Source: Phallusia mammillata (taxonomy: Eukaryota). From it: DNA of 64,000 bases. The position numbers and the translations under genes are program-made. The notes under the pieces are model-generated. The model had not been told where the DNA came from and ran no database searches. It worked only from the letters and a program-made list of their open reading frames with translations. Each line of letters opens with the position of its first letter. Within the stretch, counting starts at the first letter, position 1. The stretch is taken from contig OZ281498.1 of NCBI GenBank assembly GCA_965637545.1, positions 7,502,001 to 7,566,000 on the forward strand, written 5' to 3'. This document shows, piece by piece, positions 46,558 to 64,000 of this stretch.

Positions 46558-49500
46558 ATGAGTGGATTGGTTGCATATCCTGTAACTGAAAAGGGAGCAC
46601 GAAAGCCCAAATGTGCTCGGTGTCGTAATCATGGTGTCATCTCCTGGTTAAAGGGCCACAAGAGGCGCTGTCCCCACAGGGAGTGCAAATGCGCCAAATG
46701 CAATTTGATTGCAGAAAGACAACGCGTAATGGCGGCACAGGTAATAAAACTTACGATTTTATAAAAAAAAACGAAAAATAAACGTTTTTCTATTTTTGTA
46801 TATTTTCATTGTGGTTTTAGAATTAAAACTTAATCGCTTTTAAAGTCTTCTTGTGATTGGATATGTGACATGTCGGTGCATTCTATTTTGGCAATTAATT
46901 CAACAATTTAGGCAAAACCAAAATAATGACAAAATTTGGTTGTGAAGCGTACTTATACGTGTTTTAAGTTAGCCAAACTCGGTCGTGCGCCAAACTCATT
47001 TTCTTGTGAGCCCCCGTTACGTAACGCTTTATAGCGAGTTCAAGGATCTCTGCCTTGTGTGTACCTCTGCTGTGAACTATATTTCAAAAAGAAGAAATGG
47101 TACATGTGATAAATGCGTGGTGGACGTATGGCTATGTGGGGAGTTTTTACATTGTAGCTTGTCTCAGATTTTAATTGTACATTACATAATTTATGTCTAC
47201 ATGTCGAAATGTGCCCCCTCTGCCGGCGCCCGTGAGTGTGTAGCTACAGTACGGTTAGTCATGATCCTTTGTTTTGCGTAGCGCTTCAAGTCGCACAGCC
47301 ATTTTTGACTTAGTGATTGTTTCAATGCGTTTGCTTCGCTATGTGTTCTTACACCAAGCGAAATAAACTCAACTTTGAACTTACTAAACAATTCCAATTA
47401 GCCTACCTCAATTTTACTGATATGTAAATGAAGCAACAATTAAACAAACTCATCGCAAGATGTAAACTAAACAGCTTAATGAGATTTACTGAGATCAACT
47501 GAACAACAATGAAACTCACCTCAAACTTATGTTGAACATATTTAAACCATCCTTGTAAGTAGGTTCGAAACAGTCGATTGTTGCCCTTCAGGACCAGGTT
47601 TTTATCAACAGCGCTCTAATTAGAATGAATCAACGCCTAACGCACACGGCGTATCAAAAATTTAGAACAAAGATTTAAACGCATTGACATTTTTCAGGTG
47701 GCTTTGAAGCGTCAACAGGCCGCTGAGGATGCGATAGCACTTGGGCTTCTCTTGGTAACCAATGGCAACGAGAAGAACGCCTCGGATCACTCCATGGATA
47801 AGGAAGACGCGGAGATCAACAAGAGCAAAAATTCAGAAACCAAAAAATCGGCTCAACAGCAAGTTGTAGACATGACAAAAGACAAATTGGAAATTCAAGG
47901 TATTTAGGCATATCCACCCAACTGGTTTTACTACCGATTGTGTTGTGGGGGAAATTATATTTTGTCTTCTTGCTTTCGTTTTATCTATAAATATATGCTA
48001 CAAAAGCGCTTTGATTAAACTTTAAAAAAACAAACAAATTGCCAGCGATGTAAAATAAAACGTATTCATTTTATTATACAGATGTTTCGACAAAAACAAT
48101 TGTCATCATCAGTGAAAATATAATGTACAAGCGGAAAGAAACGCGTTTATATACACAGCAATTTAGTTTTTATTAAATCTACTATTTAAGATATATGTTT
48201 CGCCTTTACAGCATAATCACTATCTTATTTAGACAGAATTCAGAAATGTGTGTCTTAATCTTTTTGTGAACTATAAACATAAGTTCATTATAGTCTCCAT
48301 CCAGCATCGACCGACGAGCCGGGAGATTTGAGTGTTAAGTAAATAGTACAAGTAACTTATTGTAAAAAGCGTTTTCGTACAAACAACTTTTTGACGATAC
48401 TTTGAAAAAAGATATTTTTGCCTGCTTATAACTTCGTGTTGTTTTAACCTTCTTTATTTTTTGCAACCAATTTACTGCCTAAAACGCGTTTATTCATTGT
48501 TAAAATGCTGGAAGGCCTTTGAACAAGTCCTAAAGATCCAGGCTTGCGCAATTTTGTAGTGTTTTACCATAGTGGCTTACAAATTCAAGTTTTTAACTCC
48601 ATTTTGTGTGGACTTAAAATGTCGTGCGAGGCAAAATCCGCCAGGCTGAGGCTCTGTCACCTGATGAGTGTGTTCGACACAAAACAAGATGCAAAATGCG
48701 ATAATGGCCTATCCGGTTTCAACCGTTACTACACTGTCGCATCGGACTAGAGCATAACGCCAACATATCTCATGCGCCGGGGTCAAACCTTACCTGCCAA
48801 TAAGCCTGGGGGCCGCGTGGTAGGTTACAATAATATTTCGACACTCATAAAGGACCCCAACGGCCCCCGCGGGTCACTTGTGCGAGAGACAGGGTCAGGC
48901 TTTCCAGTGCCAATCGCAGTTACGTGAGAAATCGCCTCTGCCTTGTCCAGGAGGCGATTTCAGCCAGACTGGACATTATATTTCGTGGGAAGGGCTAAGT
49001 TTGTTTTTTCCTGTGTGTGTTAAGTTGCAGATATAAGCGACATGGCGTCGGCCTTAGGGGCGCTATTTTTTGGTAACTATGTGTTTCGTAAAGTTGTGGG
49101 GTCAAACGATGGTTAACGAGAATTTAGAACTGTCACACGGGAGCTGTCCAGTCGCGGAAACCATTATTTTTACATAATTATCGTGTACGTGGGAATTTGA
49201 AATCTGTATCTTTTACTGCGATAAATTTCTTTCATGCAACGGCCCTGTGGTCGAATATTTTGTCCTGTTTATTTTTAGATGCTTGTGATTGGTACTGAAC
49301 GGGATTATTTTGGCGAGCCAAAAATCGACCATCACGGGTTGACATAGGTTCTGTTTGATAAAGAATTTATTAAATACATACTCAATGGCGTGGCTAAGGG
49401 CCATGGACGCACACAATTTTAATTGCTTATCTACACAACCTGACTGATGACATCCAATGATAAAACGCATGCCATAAACGAGTATAATCTAAAACAATTT

Positions 49501-51107
49501 GCAATGGCATAGAAACCGTTGACCGTTTTTTTCTAAATTCGACAATCTCTAAAATTCAGATTATTTTCTCCCTACTGTTGGTTTTTTAAGTACATATAAT
49601 TTTGACAAGGTAATGAATACTCTAGCAGATGCCTTACACAAGAAACTTGTACAACTTCAAAGTTCAAAGGTCATTTACCAGTTTGCTATCTGCATTCGCA
49701 ACACGCAATTACTCTTCACAAGCGTCGTGCAAGCCCCACATATGCGACCCAAACTCCATGTGCCCCACACCAACCCCACTTTACATCGAGAGGGGGTCGT
49801 GACCTTTATGCTTTGCCCAATGCTGATTTTACACCCATGTAAACCAAATCCTCTCACGTCTCACTAACATCTGCTGTTATATGATATCTATGACCTGACT
49901 GATTGACGTCATAGCTCTTCAAGTTTGACCAATTGTTTACTTTTCAATCTACTTGGCTGTCAACATGTTATTTTATCGGCGATTGTTGTGTTTTTATTTG
50001 CGCTTTCGTTGATGTGCAATGCGTTTGGTACAATGAGTTGCCACATTGTTAAACGGCCTTTATAAGTATTGGCTTGTTTTTTTGTTGCTTTCGTAGTAAA
50101 TTACTATAAATTTTCATTCAAAGTTTACCCGGGACACTTGTTTTTTAGAAAGGAAAAAGCAAGTCAAGCCATTAAAGCGAACCTTATCACCAATCCACCG
50201 GTCGCCCACTTCCAAACAAGGCAAAGAAACGGCAAGTTTGCCGGAAAACGAGTCTCCAAAGCCGGCCAACCTGGGAGTAAACAACTCGATCGTGGAGTCT
50301 TTCAGACCGGGACGCCTCTCCAAGGATGAAATGCTGGAACGGCTTTTTCCGAAACAAAGAAGCAGCGTTCGAAAGTTGGTGCTCCAGGGCTGCAGCGGCG
50401 ACGTCGTAAAAGCCATTGAGCATTTTCTATCAGCTGAAGATTCTGGAGTCGTGGATACATTAGGCGAGAGAACTTCACCAAAACATACCCATGCTTCAAA
50501 CTTAAAGGATATTAATGCACCAATGCACACAGAGTCTGATGTTATCAAACGTGACGTAAAGACATATGACGTCATGATGACAAAGAGACATGCTGTCACA
50601 GTGACGTCGTCGTTGCCTAAATCGTCAAACCCGATACAAACTAGAGTACAGCCTGATAGTCAAACAAGATATAATCTAATACCAGAGCGCATTTATTCTG
50701 ATAAAAGTCCGGCTGCCCTATCCACAAACAGCTCGACAAGTGCGTTCGACTCATCCGATGTTGAGAGCCACATCCACGCTCCTCAGCCATTTATACCGGC
50801 ACCACATCACGACGACGATAAATATTTGCACCGGAATTCGAGGCTGAATTTCCCGCTGACTACATTTCCCGACTTGGGAGTTTACAAGGACCCGACATCT
50901 CGTTATTTTTTCCCGGCCAATACTGATGGGCGAACAAGTTTCGAAGGATTGCCCCCGCCAAATCTGTATTTCAATTTCCCAGGGATTGCGTCCCCGATAT
51001 ACAGTGGTAATTTTCGTTTTCCAAACGCTCTTCCACTTTCAGCGCCTTCAATGGGATCTCGCTTTAGCTTTGGTCACTACAAACCACCTTGCAGTGAATC
51101 AAGGTGA
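46558..51107 (+). CDS. Dmrt: DM-domain transcription factor with DMA domain, Dmrt93B-like; exons 46558-46740, 47698-47899, 50149-51107 (447 aa)
   Basis: DM domain [67 protein letters not shown] domain [33 protein letters not shown]. Splice phases 0 and 1 are consistent. Confidence 0.93.
48078..48118 (-). ncRNA. Minimal hammerhead-like motif (copy D) in Dmrt intron 2
   Basis: Minus strand TTCA-CTGATGA-T-GACAA TTGTTT TTGTC-GAAA-C-ATC/TG, followed by AATAAA. Core intact; helices I and III weak. Confidence 0.55.
48740..48980 (+). mobile_element. tRNA-derived SINE-like, GC-rich structured element in Dmrt intron 2
   Basis: A-box-like GTCGCATCGGACTAGAGC, B-box-like CCGGGGTCAAACC, and a perfect 11-bp stem GAAATCGCCTC / GAGGCGATTTC. 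Confidence 0.5.
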
Positions 51108-52685: not shown

Positions 52686-55600
52686 TTACAGCTCCGTGTG
52701 TTCAGTTTTTGCTTCTGCTGCATTTTCTCCCACTGTTGTATCTAAATAAACACGTCGGCATGTTTACTCTCTATATATATATCAGTCGTAGATATGCACA
52801 ATAAACTTCGGGCAATCGTACGTTTCAGAACTAAGAGGTTAGTTTGTTTTTGAAACTTGTAAATTTATGTAAAGCAAATATCAAAACCACAAAGAAATTA
52901 TTGGATAACTTGATCAAGAACATGTGTGTTTAAAACAAACGGTATCTGTTATATATACCTTCTTCTTTGACTGGAACTGACTTTAACTCCAGCACAGCGG
53001 TTCCGCTTGCGTGCGGACCAATCACCAAATCGAATTCAACCACGTGATCATCTTTCTTCTCCTCTGAGGGGAATACGTCATAATCGAGTGGTTGTTTCAT
53101 GATCAAAGCCTCAGACGCGTCAGCAGCAGTAAGCGAAACGGTTCCGTTATTGTACGAAACGGAAAAGGCTGTAAACATGAAACAAATGATAAAAATGACA
53201 AAAAGAGTTGAGTTTAATTGAGTTTTGGTAATTTTTTACAAACCTTCGCTGATTTTATTCGTGTTAACACCAGACAAGCTGAAACTTCTCTGGCACGACG
53301 TGCTTCCCGTGTTCGCTACAGCGAATATAATGCGCGTTTTGCTCTTCAGCGCCACTGTGTGGCAAGTTTCAGAGTTACTCCACTGTTTCTTGATCGCAAC
53401 ACTTCCTAAAAAGAGAAAAACGATGTAACTTTCACCAACTTGAAGACTAATGTTCGATTAATGTTACTTGGTTTAGGGTTAGGCCAAGTTTGTATGGTAA
53501 GAAAGTGAAGTTTTGTACGGTTCACATTGGAAGAAAACGTCAAGATATGGCAATCTCAATAAATACCGTAACAAGTAGTAGTGTGGCAACTTTAGTTATC
53601 ATATCTTTGTGGGATTTTTTGTAAGAGCGCCTTACAGGCTTTAAAATGAGGTTTGTGCAACTAAAAATACATTACTGTTTTTAAAAAAAATTCTGAAAGA
53701 ATACAGGTTCAGAAAATTGGTCAACAGCGTGCTCGGCAGTCGACACACATTTGACAACACAAAGTTCGAATGGAAAGTGAACAAATAAATACGCGCTCAT
53801 TGCTTCAGAATATAATACTTGTTTATATTTAACTGAAACTTATAAGCTGAAAAAATGTCTTGGATCGTCACCTTCTTCTATATAGGGTAGGAAAGTTGAA
53901 AAAGAAGCGAATATTTGTTTGTGTCTGTCGAGTCTGTCGAAAATTCCTGGGCATGCGTATGACCAATTTTGATCGGCGATCGACTCGTAAACTGATTTTG
54001 ACACGCCCAGTGAGTATTGAAGGAACAAACTGGCGAGTAGACGAACTCCTGCAGTATAAAGGAGATTTATTATTGATATTGCCAATTAAGTGAGATAAAA
54101 GAGGTAACAAATTGCAAATAAATGATATGCAGACTATCGTATTCTGTAAAATAGGGTAGAAAAAGTTCAATTAAGAATATCTTAGTACGCCAGGCCCATT
54201 GAAGGCGTCATAACGAATCAGCCGGTCATTAAGCATTCACCACCATATGGCAGGGCATAAGCTAAAAAATTCTTGCCTGCGGTGGGATTCGAACCCACGA
54301 CAGGAGTCCTTTCGGTATTTAGGCTCTACCAACTGAGTTACACAGGCTGAAAGTCTAATCACAAGCATGATTTATATAGGATTGTGCCGTGATGGCTAAT
54401 CTGCATAGACGCTTCAGGTCTGATCCCGGTATTGAATATATGTTCATCTACTGATTAATAGTCGAACTGGCGAACCCCTACTGCAAAGCTGACATGTGCA
54501 GCATACAAAGGCTATTAACAAAACCTGGTACTTTAGTATGAAAAGGTATTACCCTAAAAATGAAACCTTTCAAAGGCTGTTAGTTTAGGCGTTGTACCAG
54601 AGAGTTTAGGCGTTGTACCAGACCCTTAAGGGTCAAATGCAAAGCATGGACAAACGATGCCTTTAAAACACATTAGATATTTTTAACTACTAACACTTCC
54701 GTATTAGGTAAACAAAACAGAACTGACCTGTTACTGGGGATTGTGGTACACTGTTTGGAATCGAGTCATTACTTGTTCGAAATCTGCCCATGATCTTTTG
54801 ATAACATTTGTCGATGTCGCCACTAAACTCCACGTCATCGAACGCGAGATTGAGCTCGGGGTGGTATTTGAACGAAGAGACGAAAATCTGCTTTTTGGGC
54901 CACGATTTGGGAATCATAGCCTAAATAAAGATAGAGCATTAAATTGCAAAATTTTTGGACCGAAAGTTAAAGGGTATTGATCAGCAATTAGGCCAGCGCA
55001 ACTTAATGCATTAACCGTTGAACGAAAAAAAATGGTCCAAAGAGATTTTGTTGAGCTATAAAAACATATTATCAGCGCAGAAGCGTTATATTTCTTGTAC
55101 GCCTAATTGTGTGTAAACACTGCGGAAAACAGGCACACAACGTCGCAATACAGATACTAGCGGCTGTTGGTGAAGTAAGGGCCTGTGATGCGACCGTCAA
55201 TGGCAAAAAGGTTGTATGCACTCCTAAACTAAAGTGTGCCGATATCGAAACTAAACTAAAAAAATTTACAAGACAAAGCAGCAAAAAAGCATAACCAAAA
55301 ATCTGTCCAAAACGTCGCTTTCCCAAAAAAATCTTGTTCGAATTCAATATCCGAATTAACTTTTCAAAGAAAAAAACATAAAATTGCCTTTAACAATTGA
55401 CGAAATCCATAAATTTCCATTTCAATTTCCTGTAGGGACTTTCCATCGTCGGTAATGTGAAAGTTCCACGCGTATAAGACATCGTATGCTTCTCTGTCTT
55501 GGCCTTTATTTAAAATAATCATTTATACAATCAAATGCTGTAATTAAACCCGATTTTCAAAACTTTTTTAACGATGCCAAACTAAGCACAATTTTTCGGA

Positions 55601-58563
55601 TCAAATTAAATTTGAACGATTTTGCAACACCATTTAAAGCACGTACGTTGACGTTTTTGTAGCATCCAAAACGAATTTGGTGTAAAACATTAAACAAATG
55701 AAAAGTTGTTTTGAAAATAAAACATGGTAAGACAGCTCTTACAACATTTTTTTTGGTACAACAACAGCGCCAAAAAGTATGGTTACCATAGTGTTTGTTT
55801 TAAATAAGTATTGCGTTCACTTTGTCCAGAACGCCATAACAAGCAGCCAAATGCAAACTAAATTCATTTTAAATTATCGCCTTTTTATACAGATGCTTTA
55901 ATAACCAAACTGCACCTAGTGCTTCAATGTAGGGTCCGGCTGCGGTCGGATGAGAGGAACCAGGTCCCACTATGCGATGTTTATCGTCGGATATATTACG
56001 TGCCTTCATCTCCTCACGTACTTTCTTCAATATTTCCACGTAATCTTGAGGCTCAACATACATGAAAACTTTGCTGTCCGGCTCGTACGACAGCTCGATG
56101 TATGGGAGACGCAATTCTATAAAGTAAGTAAATATAGAAGATTTTGTATGTGTGACGTCACACCAGAGAGTATGTGAAGTCATGTTCTTGGGTACTTGTT
56201 TTTAGCCAACTGAAATCGGAAATATGCAACGTCATAAACGGCAAATGACGTCTTTTTAATTGTCTTTAACTAGTAGTGACCTTTTCACCTAGGTTAAAAC
56301 AATGTTAAGATAGCTAATTGATTTTTTCTATATCACAGATTTTTTACACGGATGAAAAAAGTGAGTTTGTCTTACTTATTCCCTCCAGATACTCGAGCGA
56401 AGTCGCCCAGAACTTTGCAAAATCATTGATAAACTCGTTCATGAAAATTACTTGATCTTTCGTTTCGTCCTCTGCATCTTTTATGCCTTGCTCCGGAGTC
56501 CATTCCTCAAGCTCAACTTTAATCCCTTGCTGCAGACAAACAACGTTTAATAATAAAAATAATAGCCCAAATAGACGTAAAAAGTGTCAAGCTTTATTGT
56601 TCAAACGTTTCGGCAAATGCTCAGGCCCTTATCTGTGATATAAAGGGCCACATCAGTTACACCCGTTTATATCGACTTGCTTTTTACATCTATTTGGGCC
56701 GTTATTTTCATTTTTAAACTTATAAATAGATCCGTGTATAGTGTTCCAACGTTTAAAATTATTTTTTTAAATAAAACCTGAATTACAAAAGTCAAATTAC
56801 AAAGAAGTTTAATTCAAACGGTAAAACAACACATAAAACAGAAAGCGTTAATATGGGGGTCCTAACTGTGGAGAAACATCTTAAGGAGGAACTTTGTGTT
56901 TGCAAGAATTAAACTCCATAGTGTTTCATACCTTTTCCAATTCTTCTATTTCCCGAAACCTTTTAACGTTTTTGGGTGAAGAGTAATAGGTGTTGGGCGC
57001 TGTGATGGTCCCAGAAATAACCTGTACATTCATATCTTGAAGCGAGCGACTCATGTTCTGTGAAGAAATAAAACAGAGACTACATTATATGTTACTTTGC
57101 TGACTCACCAGCGTCGATGTATTAAATGAGTCAGAATTTTTTAAGGAACGGTTTAGAGACAATTAAGTTCCTATAGTTTTTGCGAGTCTGGATACACCAC
57201 AAGTCCCTTAAAGACCACTGCGAGCAACATCAGATGTACATATTATGATCACAAACAGAATTGCGTAGCATGTGTTCCTGTTGAAAATGTATTAAACATT
57301 AAGCAACGTAAAAGCAGTGCCAACATTTAACTCCCTATGGGCCAAATACCATCAACATACATAGACTACGGGCCGCACCTTTACATAACACAGTGTTACT
57401 TTGTTGTGTCTATATTGAGTACAAAACCTGTAAAATTCGTGATTCTACACGTTTTTTTATGTCACTGAATTTATTCGTATCTGCAGGCCACACGACTGAG
57501 GTGTAATAAAACTTGGTGCTTTACAAAAGAAAACAGTAAAAAAATTAGCCTAAACAAAACAGCACCCTTTTTGATGGTATCTTACCTCCATGGATTCAAT
57601 ATCGCCGGCCAGGTTCCAGTAAATGCTTCCCACCCATCTCGACATTTCATCATCATCGCATCTGCGCGGAGCGGGTGCCACACCTGAAACCTCCCACACA
57701 TTTTGCCAGTAGCCAGTCTTGAAAACCGGGCCGAACTTTTTGATCAGGTTCTCCTGTCTGATTCATACAAAGAGGAAAAACCTTCAATGCTTTCATTTTG
57801 AAACTTGCAATGAGCTTATTTAACATTCGTATTTGAAATTAAAATTTCACAATCTTGAGTTTCGACTTTCATATGGTATTCGTAACACAGAGTTGTAAAT
57901 CGGGCCGGGTTCGGGCTTGGGTTTCTTCAAAAAAAAAAACGGGCTTGATTCGGGCCGGACTTTACACTCTGTGTCAGTATTTAAAAAAAAAAATTTAACT
58001 GGCCAAGTAGCCAGTTGTTGGACCTGACCTAATGTCAAACAGCCCTAAAACGCCTTGTTTACGACAAATCGTCCATTGTTTTGTTGTCTTTGTCCTTCCT
58101 AAGGGTTCAATTTATAGGCCTGTCAATCAAACTTTTGGGCCTTCTCAAAAACGATTCGGGTTCTGGCCGGGTTTCGGGCTTGTACTTTCGGGTTCAGGCT
58201 CCAATTGAAGGCCCGTTTACACCTCTGTCGTAACAACAATTAGACGTCAATTTAAGGTGCAAAATACACAACAAAGCCGATCTTAACATATCAGATAGTA
58301 TCACAGCAGGCAGTCAATTACACTAAAAATAACGTCTTGATTTGCTCAAATTTTGAGGCTAGCGTTTTTTGCACATGATGCACTGACCTTGTGTGATTGA
58401 GTGTGTATAATTGTGCCCCAAACTCGATTGGCACAATAGATTGCAATTTCCGTACATCGACTTCAAAGAAGAAATCTGAAACCTCGTCTGTATCGAGTTC
58501 TGTTTCACCATGTGAAGTTGCAATCAGTGGCAAGAATAGCCACAAAAGACTCACGTATTTCAT
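52686..58563 (-). CDS. Secreted-pathway GH30-like (clan GH-A) glycoside hydrolase-fold protein with C-terminal HTEL; 11 exons, 602 aa
   Basis: Exons: 58563-58322, 57757-57586, 57057-56932, 56529-56376, 56116-55916, 55503-55388, 54920-54728, 54048-53872, 53405-53244, 53168-52959, 52741-52686 (1809 nt, in frame). N-terminal signal peptide MKYVSLLWLFLPLIATSHG. GH30-like order of motifs: IEFGAQ, ISGTITAP, IELSYEPD, RIVGPG, AWNFH, KQIFVSS, FSTFLPYIEEG, VALKSKTRIIFAVAN. The gene structure is solid; the family call is from motif pattern only. Confidence 0.72.
54184..54347 (-). mobile_element. tRNA-derived SINE: tRNA-like head (54347-54274) plus ~80-nt body; not a functional tRNA
   Basis: Head has a 7-bp acceptor stem GCCTGTG/CGCAGGC, an A box (TAACTCAGTTGG) and T arm GTGGG-TTCGAAT-CCCAC, but no anticodon stem. 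The body recurs at 36195-36283. Confidence 0.8.
56545..56719 (-). mobile_element. Fold-back Penelope-type repeat remnant (copy B) with degenerate hammerhead, in intron 3 of the GH30-like gene
   Basis: Inverted repeat GCCCAAATAGACGTAAAAAG / CTTTTTACATCTATTTGGGC (19/20), extending imperfectly to ~40 bp; the interior is homologous to copy C. Confidence 0.7.
57888..58227. mobile_element. hAT MITE (340 bp), same family as 30409-30801, opposite orientation
   Basis: TIRs CAGAGTTGTAAA / TTTACACCTCTG; perfect TSD TCGTAACA; CGGGCCGGGTTCGGGC motifs. Confidence 0.9.
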
Positions 58564-61637: not shown

Positions 61638-63829
61638 TTACTCGGAAGAATCGCTATCAGTAAAATCAAGGCTGATCCTTCCATCAGCGTTTCGCTCGAG
61701 TCCGGATATCGCCGTACCGCTAGGTGGGGTTACAGAGCGACCAAAGCCCTCAGCAAGATCCAGTTCGTCTTGAAGCAGGAGCGTTGAACTTGAACTAGGC
61801 CGATCCTCAGAGGCGTTGGTGTTAAACTTGGCAATGGTGAAAGTGTCTGAAGCGCTAACTTGGGAAGGCGTCGTTTTTGATTCCTGTTTAGCTCTCGTGT
61901 CCAAATACCGAAGGCGCGCTTGCCGTACCATAGCGTCGCGGCGGCTTTTTAGAACAGTCTCGCGCTCGCTAGGAGCTTTGGAGAAACGCCCGCCCACCGA
62001 TAGATCGGCGTGGGACGGCCCAGGGGCGTCGATGGGGCCCTGAGGGGTGGGGATTTCCCCTTGGTGGGGTGTTGACGACGATGTCGGTGCGTTGGCAAAT
62101 GGATAAGTCGGTCTCGGTAAATCTATTATACACGTAATCTGTAACCTCCAAGTTTTGTTGTAAAAACATTGTGGAGCACCGTTAGATACAGGTTTCGAGT
62201 CGAGTTTAAAGTAAACATTATTTTTCATGCGTGCCTTTAATTATTTTAAGGGTTACTTTCAAACAAAACAAAGTCAGAAATAAATCTTAGAACCAATTTC
62301 ACAGACAAGCAAATAATATCGAGCCGAGTTTTATCCGGCGACGTTTGGTAATCTACACACTTTTATACATGACCTAAATCATTTGAAGGTCATTTCCGAA
62401 CGAGCACGAAAGTAAACGTAAAAATGTATGATAATTTAGCCGCAAGAGACCACAGAAAAGGAAATGACACAACAAACAAATATTTACAAACACGAATAAA
62501 TCAAACGTTTTCCTACATTTTATCTTTGTGCGAGAATTATGCTGCTGCATGTAATACTGGCAGCTGGTTTTAGTACTTGATTGTTTCAATGTTTTGTCGC
62601 TTTTTAGCGTTGTATTCGCTCACAAGAACTAAAGATGCCAAAAACTGTTGGTGAAATATATATTTTGTATATTTTGTGCCTTGTGCAAATTCTATGCACA
62701 ACGATTGATTCTGTTTTGGATTATATCGGTGAAGAGAATAGTAATCACAGGCGAACTGCGGTTGTAGGGTTGATTTCACTTCAAACCATACTTTATTTTT
62801 ATCCTGCCTGTGCATGCTTACATACAAAGTCGGGTCAGAACGTTTCACGAAAGCGGATATTCCCTTGTATATAAATAACCGTGTTTATTACCGGAGATAA
62901 TACGCAAGCATAGGTATTAACTGAGTACATTACACACACAGCGTACACATACCTTGCTCGGTGGTCACTTGCATGTCCGAGTCATCACGTGACGCTTGAC
63001 CGGTGTGACGTCGGCGCAATGACGTACCTAAAATTGTTTGGACCATAAGTTTAGTCATGATTTTTAAAGCCTTTAATGAACACGTGTACGCATATAAATA
63101 CAATTAAAGCAGACGGACTGTCCTTGCAGCGTCATGTTTGACGTCATTGTCTACGTTCTATGACGCATCAACCGAATTTATATGCAGTTTAATAAATTAG
63201 AGATCCAAAATTACCTTAGCTTTTGCAAACTAACAAGCATGCAATGATAAACACAGAAAAATCGATGCAAGGTTACTGAAAATAATTTTGTCGCTTTTAT
63301 ACCTAAAAACATAATTTTAGACTGCCTTATTTTTGTCCCAGCCCTTGTGGCCAATCATTAGATCATTATCTTGATTGTAAAAATGCCACACATCATTTTA
63401 AATCTTTAGCACTGAAAAAAAGAAAATTTCCCCTGTATTTACACTTATAAAACAACATAATATTGTAAACTGAAATATCTTCTTTTCAGCAGGGTACAAT
63501 ACCACTAATGTATTACCCAAAACTGGATTTCCCTGCATTATGTGAAGCAGCATTTGACAAACCTTCACTCCTGTATTGTTAAAAGTAAAATATATAACTG
63601 ATCTGTTTTAGTTGGATAGGAAAAATTCATTTTTACCTGGACTTGGTTCAGTGCGAGGGAGTGGTTGTACACCCTCGCTAACTAGGGGTGAAGGTGGTGG
63701 GGTTGGTTGGGGCATTCCACCCATCATTTGGTTAGGTGGGACCTGGATGCGTCCGTCAAGAATTCTTTCAGATGTTGCCTCCACAGACCCAGTCACTAAA
63801 AGATCACCTCTGATAAGTTGTGCAGGAAT
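61638..63829 (-). CDS. AMFR: E3 ubiquitin ligase AMFR/gp78, 3' part only; exons 63829-63637, 63027-62953, 62122-61638; 5' exons lie beyond the window
   Basis: CUE-domain segment IPAQLIRGDLLVTGSVEATSERILDGRIQVPP (human [31 protein letters not shown]). G2BR motif FSKAPSERETVLKSRRDAMVRQARLRYL (human FSKSADERQRMLVQRKDELLQQARKRFL). Confidence 0.9.
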
Positions 63830-64000
63830 CTGGAAACAAAACAGCACTTTTGGCAAGGCACAATTTGACAGGTTTTAATTGAAATTCTATGAAGTAAAAA
63901 GAATTTTAAATTGTAAAAGCAACTCTAACTTTCTGAGATTTTCTTGCAATTAACTGAATTATGCAATTAACCATAATATTTTCTTTACTAACATATGCAA

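What the first reader, a model, noticed from the sequence alone, without database searches (positions are those of the whole stretch)
52686..58563. ER-retained GH30-fold protein that seems to lack its catalytic nucleophile
Seen: a 602-aa protein with a signal peptide and C-terminal HTEL. The acid/base motif reads YEPD (Glu codon 56084-56082) instead of NEP, and the strand-7 motif reads KQIFVSSF, with Ser (54875-54873) where GH30 enzymes have the nucleophile Glu of (W/F)xTE. Known: clan GH-A enzymes need both glutamates; HTEL is a KDEL-receptor ligand (as in CES2); engineered Glu-to-Ser nucleophile mutants bind sugars or act as glycosynthases. Inference: an ER-luminal pseudo-glycosidase acting as a lectin/chaperone or transferase-like protein. 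I cannot match it to a named gene, and its pattern resembles microbial GH30 more than lysosomal GBA, so horizontal origin is possible.
Basis: partly seen in the sequence, partly recalled or inferred. Interest (0 to 1): 0.75.

Follow-up and report, generated by a model that had tools for sequence, protein, structure and literature searches.

The report
Tunicate ER-retained dead GH30-like glycosidase
This is a real, conserved sea-squirt gene for a protein with a bacterial-type sugar-cleaving (GH30) fold that has lost its key catalytic residue and carries an ER-retention tail, so it is probably a gene once acquired from bacteria and now used for something other than hydrolysis.

Summary
An intact 11-exon gene lies on the minus strand (58563-52686) and encodes about 580 aa, not 602, with a signal peptide and a C-terminal HTEL.

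- **Orthologues.** The Ciona intestinalis orthologue is 'uncharacterized protein LOC100183597' (47% identity). It has the same ten intron positions, the same neighbours (AMFR-like E3 ligase, DMRT) and also ends in HTEL. Two further orthologues, on eukaryotic contigs of metagenome assemblies, end in HSEL.
- **Active site.** All four lineages keep the acid/base Glu (xEPD) and have Ser where 17 bacterial relatives have the nucleophile Glu. They have also lost the Asn of NEP, a strand-2 Arg and three Trp.
- **Fold.** The AlphaFold model of the Ciona orthologue matches GH30 xylanases at Z 32.9 (379 of 386 residues). The Ser aligns with the nucleophile of a solved GH30 enzyme.
- **Relatives.** The protein alone matches nothing in Pfam, NCBIfam or PDB. 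Its only detectable relatives are a small bacterial family (profile-profile E 1e-36).

Best reading: an ancient, probably horizontally acquired GH30-like pseudoenzyme living in the ER lumen. Not shown: its function, its expression in this animal, and the transfer itself (no rooted tree). No paper was found that mentions it.

The parts
58388..58563 (-). Exon 1: start codon at 58563, signal peptide (about 58563-58507), start of the mature protein
   Evidence: The donor is AAG|gtcagt.
57586..57757 (-). Exon 2, holding the tunicate-conserved motif VWEVSG..PAPR
   Evidence: The donor is GAG|gtaaga. The boundary matches the Ciona exon 2.
56932..57057 (-). Exon 3, holding the tunicate-conserved motif APNTYY
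56376..56529 (-). Exon 4, holding DFAKFWA (the helix before strand 4)
55916..56116 (-). Exon 5: strand 4 and the motif IELSYEPD. The acid/base Glu codon is 56084-56082 (E221).
55388..55503 (-). Exon 6: strand 6 with WxxH. It is followed by a GC-AG intron whose donor GC is at 55387-55386.
   Evidence: The other three species have GT at this donor.
54728..54920 (-). Exon 7: strand 7 and the motif KKQIFVSSF. Ser codon 54875-54873 (S331) sits at the nucleophile position.
53872..54048 (-). Exon 8: helix 7, strand 8 and the retained D..W
53244..53405 (-). Exon 9: beta-sandwich side domain with C.RSFSLSG.
52959..53168 (-). Exon 10: beta-sandwich with YNNGTVSL, which contains a conserved N-glycosylation sequon
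52686..52741 (-). Exon 11: acidic linker, then HTEL (52700-52689) and the stop (52688-52686)
   Evidence: HxEL also ends the Ciona, L001 and L014 orthologues.
46558..51107 (+). Neighbouring DMRT-type gene (DM exon about 46558-46764, DMA exon 50238-51107), convergent with the GH30-like gene
   Evidence: Pfam DMA domain at E 9e-13. Synteny with Ciona locus L006.
61692..63835 (-). 3' exons of the upstream neighbour, an AMFR/SYVN1-like RING and CUE E3 ligase gene
   Evidence: tblastx colinearity with the Ciona gene that carries TPR_SYVN1_N, RING and CUE domains.

Best explanation
The gene encodes a soluble secretory-pathway protein of about 580 aa, built as a GH30-type (beta/alpha)8 barrel with the family's side beta-sandwich. 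It belongs to a family so far seen only in tunicates. That family's only detectable sequence relatives are a small group of bacterial GH30-like 'O-glycosyl hydrolases', so it was most likely acquired from a bacterium early in tunicate evolution and later gained ten introns.

In the tunicate lineage the catalytic nucleophile Glu became Ser. Several other residues that are invariant in the 17 bacterial relatives were also replaced: the Asn of NEP, a strand-2 Arg and three Trp. The acid/base Glu, a strand-6 His and a strand-8 Asp and Trp were kept. The classical two-carboxylate retaining hydrolysis is therefore not possible.

The conserved C-terminal H(T/S)EL should be read by the KDEL receptor and keep the protein in the ER lumen. 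There it most likely acts without hydrolysis, as a glycan-binding (lectin- or chaperone-like) protein.

- **Shown here:** the gene structure, orthology, fold, residue equivalences, and conservation of Ser and HxEL.
- **Inferred:** ER residence, loss of activity, the binding role, and the horizontal origin.
For: **The gene is real and old.**
- The 11-exon model is colinear with Ciona XP_018671384.1 at 47% identity.
- All ten intron positions are shared.
- The order AMFR-like | this gene | DMRT is conserved between the window and Ciona.
- Intact orthologues lie in two more eukaryotic contig sets.
- dN is 0.40-0.56 while synonymous sites are saturated.

**Fold.**
- AF2 model of the Ciona orthologue: pLDDT 77, pTM 0.80.
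- Foldseek: E 1e-19 to GH30_8 xylanases.
- VIA-align: Z 32.9, 379 of 386 residues, rmsd 3.0 Å. All 50 listed entries are GH30 family or GH30-like structures.

**Homology chain.**
- Tunicate profile against bacterial profile: probability 99.9%, E 1e-36, 366 columns.
- Family profile against solved GH30 structures: E 1.5e-17.

**Catalytic positions.**
- The family's 'iELfnEPD' aligns with 'ISIQNEPD' of PDB 9ywn, and 'KPifiTEfa' with 'KPIFQTEYD'.
- All four tunicate sequences have Ser where 17 of 17 bacterial domains have Glu.
- They also lack six other residues that are invariant in the bacterial domains.

**Secretory and ER features.**
- Signal-peptide-like N-terminus and no transmembrane segment.
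- Four tunicate-conserved Cys and a conserved NGT sequon.
- C-termini are HTEL, HTEL, HSEL and HSEL on otherwise unconserved tails.
- HXEL is the ER retrieval signal of the mammalian carboxylesterases CES1 and CES2 (PMC11845761).

**Origin.**
- Only tunicate and bacterial hits appeared among 1.84 billion representative proteins.
- The nearest Atlas clusters, by features and by shape, are all bacterial.
- The bacterial relatives come from Kiritimatiellota, Verrucomicrobiota, Gammaproteobacteria and Cyanobacteria.
Against: - **No expression evidence in this animal.** Contigs of four presumed RNA runs cover only intronic repeats.
- **One unusual splice site.** Intron 6 has a GC donor here, where the other three species have GT.
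- **The model is of the orthologue.** The structure is of the Ciona protein, not of the window's protein.
- **No 3D check of residues.** Residue equivalence comes from sequence and profile alignments and from strand positions, because no atomic superposition could be inspected.
- **Thin search for eukaryotic relatives.** The exhaustive search used only a 66-aa exon, and the full-length searches were limited by shared words. Distant eukaryotic relatives could have been missed.
- **No rooted tree.** Horizontal transfer was not tested against vertical descent.
- **The acid/base Glu is invariant.** This is odd for a purely non-catalytic protein.
- **Tunicate KDEL receptors.** That they read HxEL is assumed from mammals.
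Confidence: 0.6

Rival explanations
1. The protein is still an enzyme that uses a non-classical mechanism. Options are substrate-assisted catalysis, another carboxylate (for example the invariant Glu four residues before the acid/base Glu), or transfer from an activated donor in the manner of an engineered Glu-to-Ser 'glycosynthase'.
For: The acid/base Glu, the EPD motif, a strand-6 His and a strand-8 Asp and Trp are invariant in all tunicate and bacterial sequences. The Ser itself is invariant in four lineages rather than drifting. New tunicate-specific invariant motifs follow strands 2 and 3 of the model, on the loops that form the catalytic face in such barrels, which suggests a remodelled rather than decayed pocket. 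Klotho domains that lack one catalytic Glu have been reported with weak activity (PMC11696049).
Against: Seven residues invariant in the bacterial relatives are lost together, including the Asn of NEP, a strand-2 Arg and a strand-8 Trp. From general knowledge, no natural clan GH-A enzyme is known to work without a nucleophile carboxylate, and glycosynthases need artificial fluoride donors.
Confidence: 0.15
2. On origin only: the gene is an extremely diverged, vertically inherited animal GH30 gene that other animals lost, and not a horizontal transfer.
For: Animals do have GH30 (glucocerebrosidase), which matches the model at Z about 28. Tunicate proteins evolve fast. The gene has ten introns and stable synteny. 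The search for eukaryotic relatives was limited.
Against: The tunicate profile matches the bacterial family at E 1e-36. The combined family profile matches glucocerebrosidase only at about 4e-3, against 1.5e-17 for bacterial GH30_8. No non-tunicate eukaryotic hit appeared in the exhaustive exon search, although a bacterial protein at 38% identity was found.
Confidence: 0.2
3. In this particular animal the gene is decaying or silent.
For: Intron 6 has a GC donor where three other species have GT. No exon is covered by contigs of four presumed RNA runs.
Against: All 11 exons are open and in frame. Every conserved motif and the HTEL are intact. GC-AG introns are a known functional minority, from general knowledge. 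The RNA contig sets are small (16-34 million letters) and only guessed to be RNA.
Confidence: 0.07
4. The protein is secreted, for example into the tunic or the gut, and HxEL is not an effective retention signal in tunicates.
For: Tunicate-specific genes of bacterial origin described so far, CesA and GH6-1, act on the extracellular tunic (PMC10334666). HxEL proteins can partly escape the ER (PMC11845761).
Against: H(T/S)EL is the only conserved element of an otherwise variable last exon in four lineages. That pattern is what selection on a C-terminal retrieval tetrapeptide would produce.
Confidence: 0.1

Closest known systems
GH30 subfamily 8 glucuronoxylanases (for example Bacillus subtilis XynC, PDB 3kl0/3gtn; Clostridium papyrosolvens, 4fmv)
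   Same: The same two-domain fold: a (beta/alpha)8 barrel with a side beta-sandwich (Z 32.9, 379 of 386 residues). The acid/base Glu sits in an xEPD motif after strand 4.
   Different: Only 10-14% identity. The tunicate protein alone gives no direct sequence hit to them. The nucleophile Glu is Ser and the Asn of NEP is Tyr, Leu or Trp. There are large tunicate-specific insertions between strands 2 and 4. It has a eukaryotic signal peptide and HxEL.
Uncharacterised bacterial GH30-like family, called 'O-glycosyl hydrolase' in IMG (Tichowtungia MAG tandem-domain protein P0006, Aetokthonos hydrillicola P0017, and others)
   Same: The closest sequence relatives: 21-30% identity, BLASTP down to 3e-24, profile-profile E 1e-36. 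They share IEL.xEPD, GPG, WS.H, D..W and the C-terminal sandwich.
   Different: All 17 bacterial domains keep both catalytic Glu and the NEP Asn, Arg and Trp residues that the tunicates lost. None has a reported Pfam hit above the curated cutoff. Their substrate is unknown.
Klotho KL1 and KL2 domains (GH1, clan GH-A pseudo-glycosidases of animals)
   Same: An animal protein with a clan GH-A barrel that has lost one of the two catalytic glutamates and works mainly as a binding scaffold (PMC11696049).
   Different: A different GH family (GH1, not GH30), vertebrate and membrane-anchored at the cell surface rather than in the ER lumen. No bacterial origin has been proposed for it.
GH6 domain of tunicate cellulose synthase CesA, and GH6-1
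   Same: Tunicate-specific glycoside hydrolase genes regarded as bacterial transfers. The CesA GH6 domain lacks a catalytic Asp and is thought to be non-catalytic (PMC10334666).
   Different: An unrelated fold and family (GH6). Those proteins act in tunic cellulose metabolism at the epidermis. The present gene is not in the published tunicate transfer lists (PMC13390645).
HXEL-bearing ER-lumen residents (human CES1 HIEL, CES2 HTEL)
   Same: A soluble protein with a signal peptide and a C-terminal HXEL retrieval motif.
   Different: An unrelated fold (alpha/beta hydrolase), and those are active enzymes.

Membership tests
CAZy GH30 | (beta/alpha)8 barrel with a tightly associated side beta-sandwich domain | tested here: met
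   AF2 model of the Ciona orthologue: Foldseek E 1e-19, VIA-align Z 32.9 over model residues 26-553. All 50 listed entries are GH30 family or GH30-like structures.
CAZy GH30 | Significant sequence similarity to family members | tested here: inconclusive
   The tunicate protein alone gives no Pfam, NCBIfam or PDB hit. Similarity shows only through bacterial intermediates: tunicate to bacterial profile E 1e-36, and the combined profile to GH30 structures E 1.5e-17.
CAZy GH30 | Acid/base Glu after strand 4 (NEP motif) | tested here: met
   The Glu is kept in all four tunicate sequences and aligns with the NEPD Glu of 4fmv, 5cxp and 9ywn. The preceding Asn is replaced by Tyr, Leu or Trp.
CAZy GH30 | Nucleophile Glu at the end of strand 7 | tested here: not met
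   Ser in the window, Ciona, L001 and L003 where 17 of 17 bacterial relatives and 9ywn (QTEYD) have Glu.
CAZy GH30 | Retaining glycoside hydrolase activity | not testable with these tools
   This needs recombinant protein and substrate panels.
Soluble ER residents retrieved by the KDEL receptor | N-terminal signal peptide and no membrane anchor | tested here: met
   The N-terminus has a 13-residue hydrophobic core. The highest 19-residue hydropathy elsewhere is 1.2. This is judged by inspection, since no dedicated predictor was available.
Soluble ER residents retrieved by the KDEL receptor | C-terminal KDEL-type tetrapeptide, conserved among orthologues | tested here: met
   HTEL (window), HTEL (two Ciona assemblies), HSEL (L001) and HSEL (L014). 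HXEL is documented as a retrieval signal.
Soluble ER residents retrieved by the KDEL receptor | Demonstrated ER localisation | not testable with these tools
   This needs imaging or fractionation.
Horizontally acquired tunicate genes (criteria of Tamura et al. 2026, PMC13390645) | Lies on a chromosome, with orthologues in other tunicates | tested here: met
   In Ciona the gene lies on the 18-Mb record AP043567.1, with introns and conserved synteny. There are three further orthologous loci, but the taxon of L001 and L003 is inferred, not recorded.
Horizontally acquired tunicate genes (criteria of Tamura et al. 2026, PMC13390645) | Supported by RNA reads | tested here: inconclusive
   No exon coverage in contigs of four presumed RNA runs of this organism. 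Ciona RNA was not examined.
Horizontally acquired tunicate genes (criteria of Tamura et al. 2026, PMC13390645) | A phylogeny or distribution incompatible with vertical descent | tested here: inconclusive
   Only tunicate and bacterial hits were found.

The most novel reading that the evidence does not exclude
A bacterial GH30-like hydrolase gene entered the tunicate ancestor. It was then converted, by replacement of its nucleophile with an invariant Ser while the acid/base Glu was kept, into an ER-lumen protein with a new activity. It would be either a natural 'glycosynthase-like' transglycosylase that uses an activated sugar donor present in the ER, or a dedicated lectin for a tunicate-specific glycan pathway. 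That would make it a second case, after CesA and GH6, of foreign carbohydrate enzymes shaping tunicate biology.
Probability: 0.12. Interest if true: 0.85.

Novelty: new variant of a known kind. Interest (0 to 1): 0.62.

Why it matters
Tunicates are the textbook case of an animal lineage changed by a bacterial carbohydrate-enzyme gene (cellulose synthase). This would be a further, so far undescribed candidate. The most recent systematic survey of Ciona could not have detected it, because its BLAST threshold (1e-25) is stricter than this gene's similarity to bacterial proteins.

It also adds a new family to the short list of animal glycosidase-fold pseudoenzymes, such as Klotho. Here the location is unusual (the ER lumen) and the pattern is clean: the nucleophile is lost in every lineage and the acid/base residue is kept in every lineage. 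That makes it easy to test by changing the Ser back to Glu and by deleting the HTEL tail in Ciona, where transgenesis and knock-outs are routine.

Tried and rejected
- **Pfam on ten exon-sized reading frames:** no family reached significance; the only rows were two chance-level matches at E 0.12 and 0.23. Exons of 40-70 aa are too short.
- **PDB search with exon 5 alone:** only a chance-level hit.
- **RNA evidence:** the four runs laid are small contig sets. They matched only three intronic repeat patches (54180-54510, 56570-56710, 57930-58200), so the splice junctions could not be verified.
- **Word-indexed homologue searches:** run with the Ciona protein and with a mixed alignment, they returned only the Ciona protein itself. 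That says little about distant relatives.
- **First gene-model draft:** the first full build gave 584 aa because it used the wrong exon 2/3 junction; before that, a draft exon list had no exon 9 and needed a GC donor at intron 6. The Ciona-guided tblastn supplied exon 9 and exposed the GC donor; the junction was corrected, giving 580 aa.
- **Alignment with exon fragments (A2):** several fragments were misplaced, so it was not used for folding. A3, with full-length rows only, was used instead.
- **Genome scan with a 14-sequence alignment:** It was repeated with four close sequences.
- **Metagenome scan for more orthologues:** it found only further contigs that appear to be from the same organism as L003 (identical match statistics, near-identical exon translations), one of them the L003 contig itself.
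- **dN/dS:** not computable, because synonymous sites are saturated.
- **The window's own spliced protein:** it has no reference, so it could not be given to the fold, family or big search tools. The Ciona orthologue stood in for it.
- **Contamination:** rejected (introns, synteny).
- **GH39, GH5, GH79:** Atlas feature searches pointed to these families, all listed under Pfam accessions in those outputs. By structure and by profile, GH30 is clearly the best match.
Full report
**1. What is in the sequence.**

The region is AT-rich (about 37% G+C) and broken into short open frames, as expected for an intron-rich eukaryotic gene. Ten exon-sized frames gave no Pfam match.

An exhaustive phmmer search with exon 5 (66 aa, window:55917-56114:-) against 1.84 billion representative proteins gave six hits:
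- three exon-sized ORFs;
- one 574-aa protein, P0004 (48% identity, E 3.7e-13);
- one repeat-protein artefact;
- one 891-aa bacterial protein, P0006 (E 7e-4).

P0004 is Ciona intestinalis XP_018671384.1, 'uncharacterized protein LOC100183597'.

With P0004 as a guide I built an 11-exon model. The exons are 58563-58388, 57757-57586, 57057-56932, 56529-56376, 56116-55916, 55503-55388, 54920-54728, 54048-53872, 53405-53244, 53168-52959 and 52741-52686.
- The model gives 580 aa with no internal stop, and 267 of 571 aligned residues are identical to Ciona.
- Nine introns are GT-AG and one is GC-AG (donor at 55387).
- The N-terminus looks like a signal peptide and there is no other hydrophobic segment.
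- The protein ends in HTEL.

**2. The gene is real, old and under constraint.**

The Ciona locus L006 lies on an 18-Mb chromosome record. It has 11 exons whose boundaries fall at the same alignment positions as in the window.

The neighbours are the same in both genomes. Upstream on the same strand is an AMFR/SYVN1-like RING-CUE ligase gene. Downstream and convergent is a DM/DMA (DMRT) gene.

Two more orthologues were found as exon sets on eukaryotic contigs of metagenome assemblies. One is L001. The other is L003, extended by L014.

Pairwise amino-acid identity among the four lineages is 43-53%. dN is 0.40-0.56 with synonymous sites saturated, and every copy is open across all the exons seen. 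No paralogue lies in the window.

**3. Fold and family.**

P0004 by itself matches nothing in Pfam, NCBIfam or the PDB sequences. Three lines of evidence still link it to GH30.
- P0004 aligns to both halves of the bacterial protein P0006 at BLASTP E 1e-14 and 9e-12.
- A profile of the four tunicate sequences matches a profile of 17 bacterial domains with probability 99.9%, E 1e-36, over 366 columns. The 17 domains are the two halves of P0006 plus the relatives found.
- The combined profile A3 hits solved GH30 enzymes at E 1.5e-17 (5cxp), 2.5e-16 (4fmv) and 2.3e-15 (9ywn). It hits glucocerebrosidase only at about 4e-3.

An AlphaFold2 model of P0004 built on A3 has pLDDT 77 and pTM 0.80, with eight barrel strands and a C-terminal sandwich. 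Foldseek ranks GH30 subfamily-8 xylanases first at E 1e-19. VIA-align gives Z 32.9 with 379 of 386 residues aligned at 3.0 Å. All 50 listed entries are GH30 family or GH30-like structures, and human glucocerebrosidase scores Z about 28. Language-model and shape searches of the ESM Atlas return only bacterial GH39, GH5 and GH30-like clusters.

**4. Catalytic positions.**

In the profile-to-structure alignments the family motif 'iELfnEPD' lies on 'ISIQNEPD', 'ISVQNEPD' and 'LSLQNEPD' of GH30 enzymes. The motif 'KPifiTEfa' lies on 'KPIFQTEYD' of 9ywn. These are the acid/base and nucleophile motifs. In the model they follow strand 4 (residues 214-216) and lie in strand 7 (326-333).

The table below compares the four tunicate sequences with the 17 bacterial domains. 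The four states are in the order window, Ciona, L001, L003.

| Residue in all 17 bacterial domains | State in the four tunicate sequences |
|---|---|
| Acid/base Glu | kept in all four |
| Nucleophile Glu | Ser in all four |
| Asn of NEP | Tyr, Leu, Trp, Trp |
| Strand-2 Arg | Thr, Leu, Leu, Thr |
| Strand-8 Trp | Glu, Thr, Glu, Glu |
| Two further Trp | replaced |
| One Asp | replaced |
| One Gly | replaced |
| EPD, the Glu four residues upstream, a strand-6 W.xH, a strand-8 D..W | kept |

New tunicate-only invariant motifs appear (VWEVSG..PAPR, APNTYY, C.RSFSLSG, YNNGTVSL). Two of them follow strands 2 and 3 of the model, that is, on the loops that form the catalytic face in such barrels. 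The pocket was therefore remodelled rather than simply left to decay.

**5. Secretory and ER features.**

Four Cys are conserved only among the tunicates, and the invariant NGT sequon sits in YNNGTVSL. The last exon is poorly conserved except for its end:

| Orthologue | C-terminus |
|---|---|
| Window | HTEL |
| Ciona, both assemblies | HTEL |
| L001 | HSEL |
| L014 | HSEL |

HXEL is the ER retrieval motif of the mammalian carboxylesterases, HIEL in CES1 and HTEL in CES2 (PMC11845761). ER residence is an inference from this.

**6. Origin.**

The bacterial relatives are few and scattered: a Tichowtungia (Kiritimatiellota) MAG, a Verrucomicrobiota MAG, Luminiphilus, Aetokthonos, Microcoleus and an Enterobacterales MAG. 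All tunicate sequences are about equally distant from them (21-30% identity, E down to 3e-24), so no donor can be named.

No non-tunicate eukaryotic relative was found. The only exhaustive search, however, used a single exon, and no outgroup-rooted tree could be built. I put horizontal acquisition at roughly two in three.

The gene is absent from the 2026 survey of horizontally transferred Ciona genes. That survey required BLAST E below 1e-25 and also missed GH6-1 for the same reason (PMC13390645). The locus name occurs in no paper of the library.

**7. Mechanism.**

Without a carboxylate at the nucleophile position, and without the Asn, Arg and Trp that bacterial relatives keep, the Koshland double-displacement reaction cannot run. 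The most economical reading is a non-hydrolytic glycan-binding protein of the ER lumen. Precedents for the type:
- Klotho, a clan GH-A barrel in which each domain lacks one catalytic Glu (PMC11696049).
- The GH6 domain of tunicate CesA, bacterial in origin and lacking its catalytic Asp (PMC10334666).

The strict retention of the acid/base Glu and of the Ser keeps a catalytic alternative alive. I give that alternative about 15%.

**8. Caveats.**

- Expression in this animal is unproven. The four presumed RNA runs covered only intronic repeats.
- The GC donor of intron 6 is GT in the other three species.
- The structure is of the orthologue, because the window's spliced protein has no reference and could not be submitted to the fold or family tools.
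No sequence was taken for human.

Noticed in passing
window 55386-55387 (intron 55387-54921): Intron 6 of the gene starts with GC (AAG|gcaatt). The orthologous intron starts with GT in Ciona, L001 and L003/L014. It is either a functional GC-AG intron or a recent change that weakens splicing.
   Followed up: partly
window 54180-54510, 56570-56710, 57930-58200: Three intronic patches match many unrelated contigs of four presumed RNA runs at 90-95% identity, with loose ends on both sides. They behave like interspersed repeats or short transposable elements that are carried in many transcripts.
   Followed up: no
window 46558-51107 (+): A DMRT-type gene lies convergent with the GH30-like gene. Its DM-domain exon is about 90% identical at the protein level to the Ciona exon, and it has a DMA-motif exon (Pfam E 9e-13). 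The arrangement is the same in Ciona.
   Followed up: partly
window 61692-63835 (-): The 3' exons of an AMFR/SYVN1-like RING-CUE E3 ligase gene lie directly upstream, syntenic with Ciona. Ligases of this kind act in ER-associated degradation. Its conserved adjacency to a putative ER-lumen lectin-like protein may be coincidence, but it is worth a look.
   Followed up: no
L007 (Tichowtungia sp. MAG, JBFHEM010000037.1), protein P0006: The bacterial relative found with exon 5 is a tandem fusion of two GH30-like domains, 33% identical to each other. Each keeps both catalytic Glu. No Pfam model reaches its cutoff on it, so the bacterial family is itself unclassified.
   Followed up: partly
L001, L003/L014, L013, L015: Metagenome assemblies (ENA ERZ25067576, ERZ272417xx; JGI 3300027611, JGI24158/24159) hold long intron-rich eukaryotic contigs that carry this gene. 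They are presumably host (tunicate) DNA in host-associated samples. The species were not identified.
   Followed up: no
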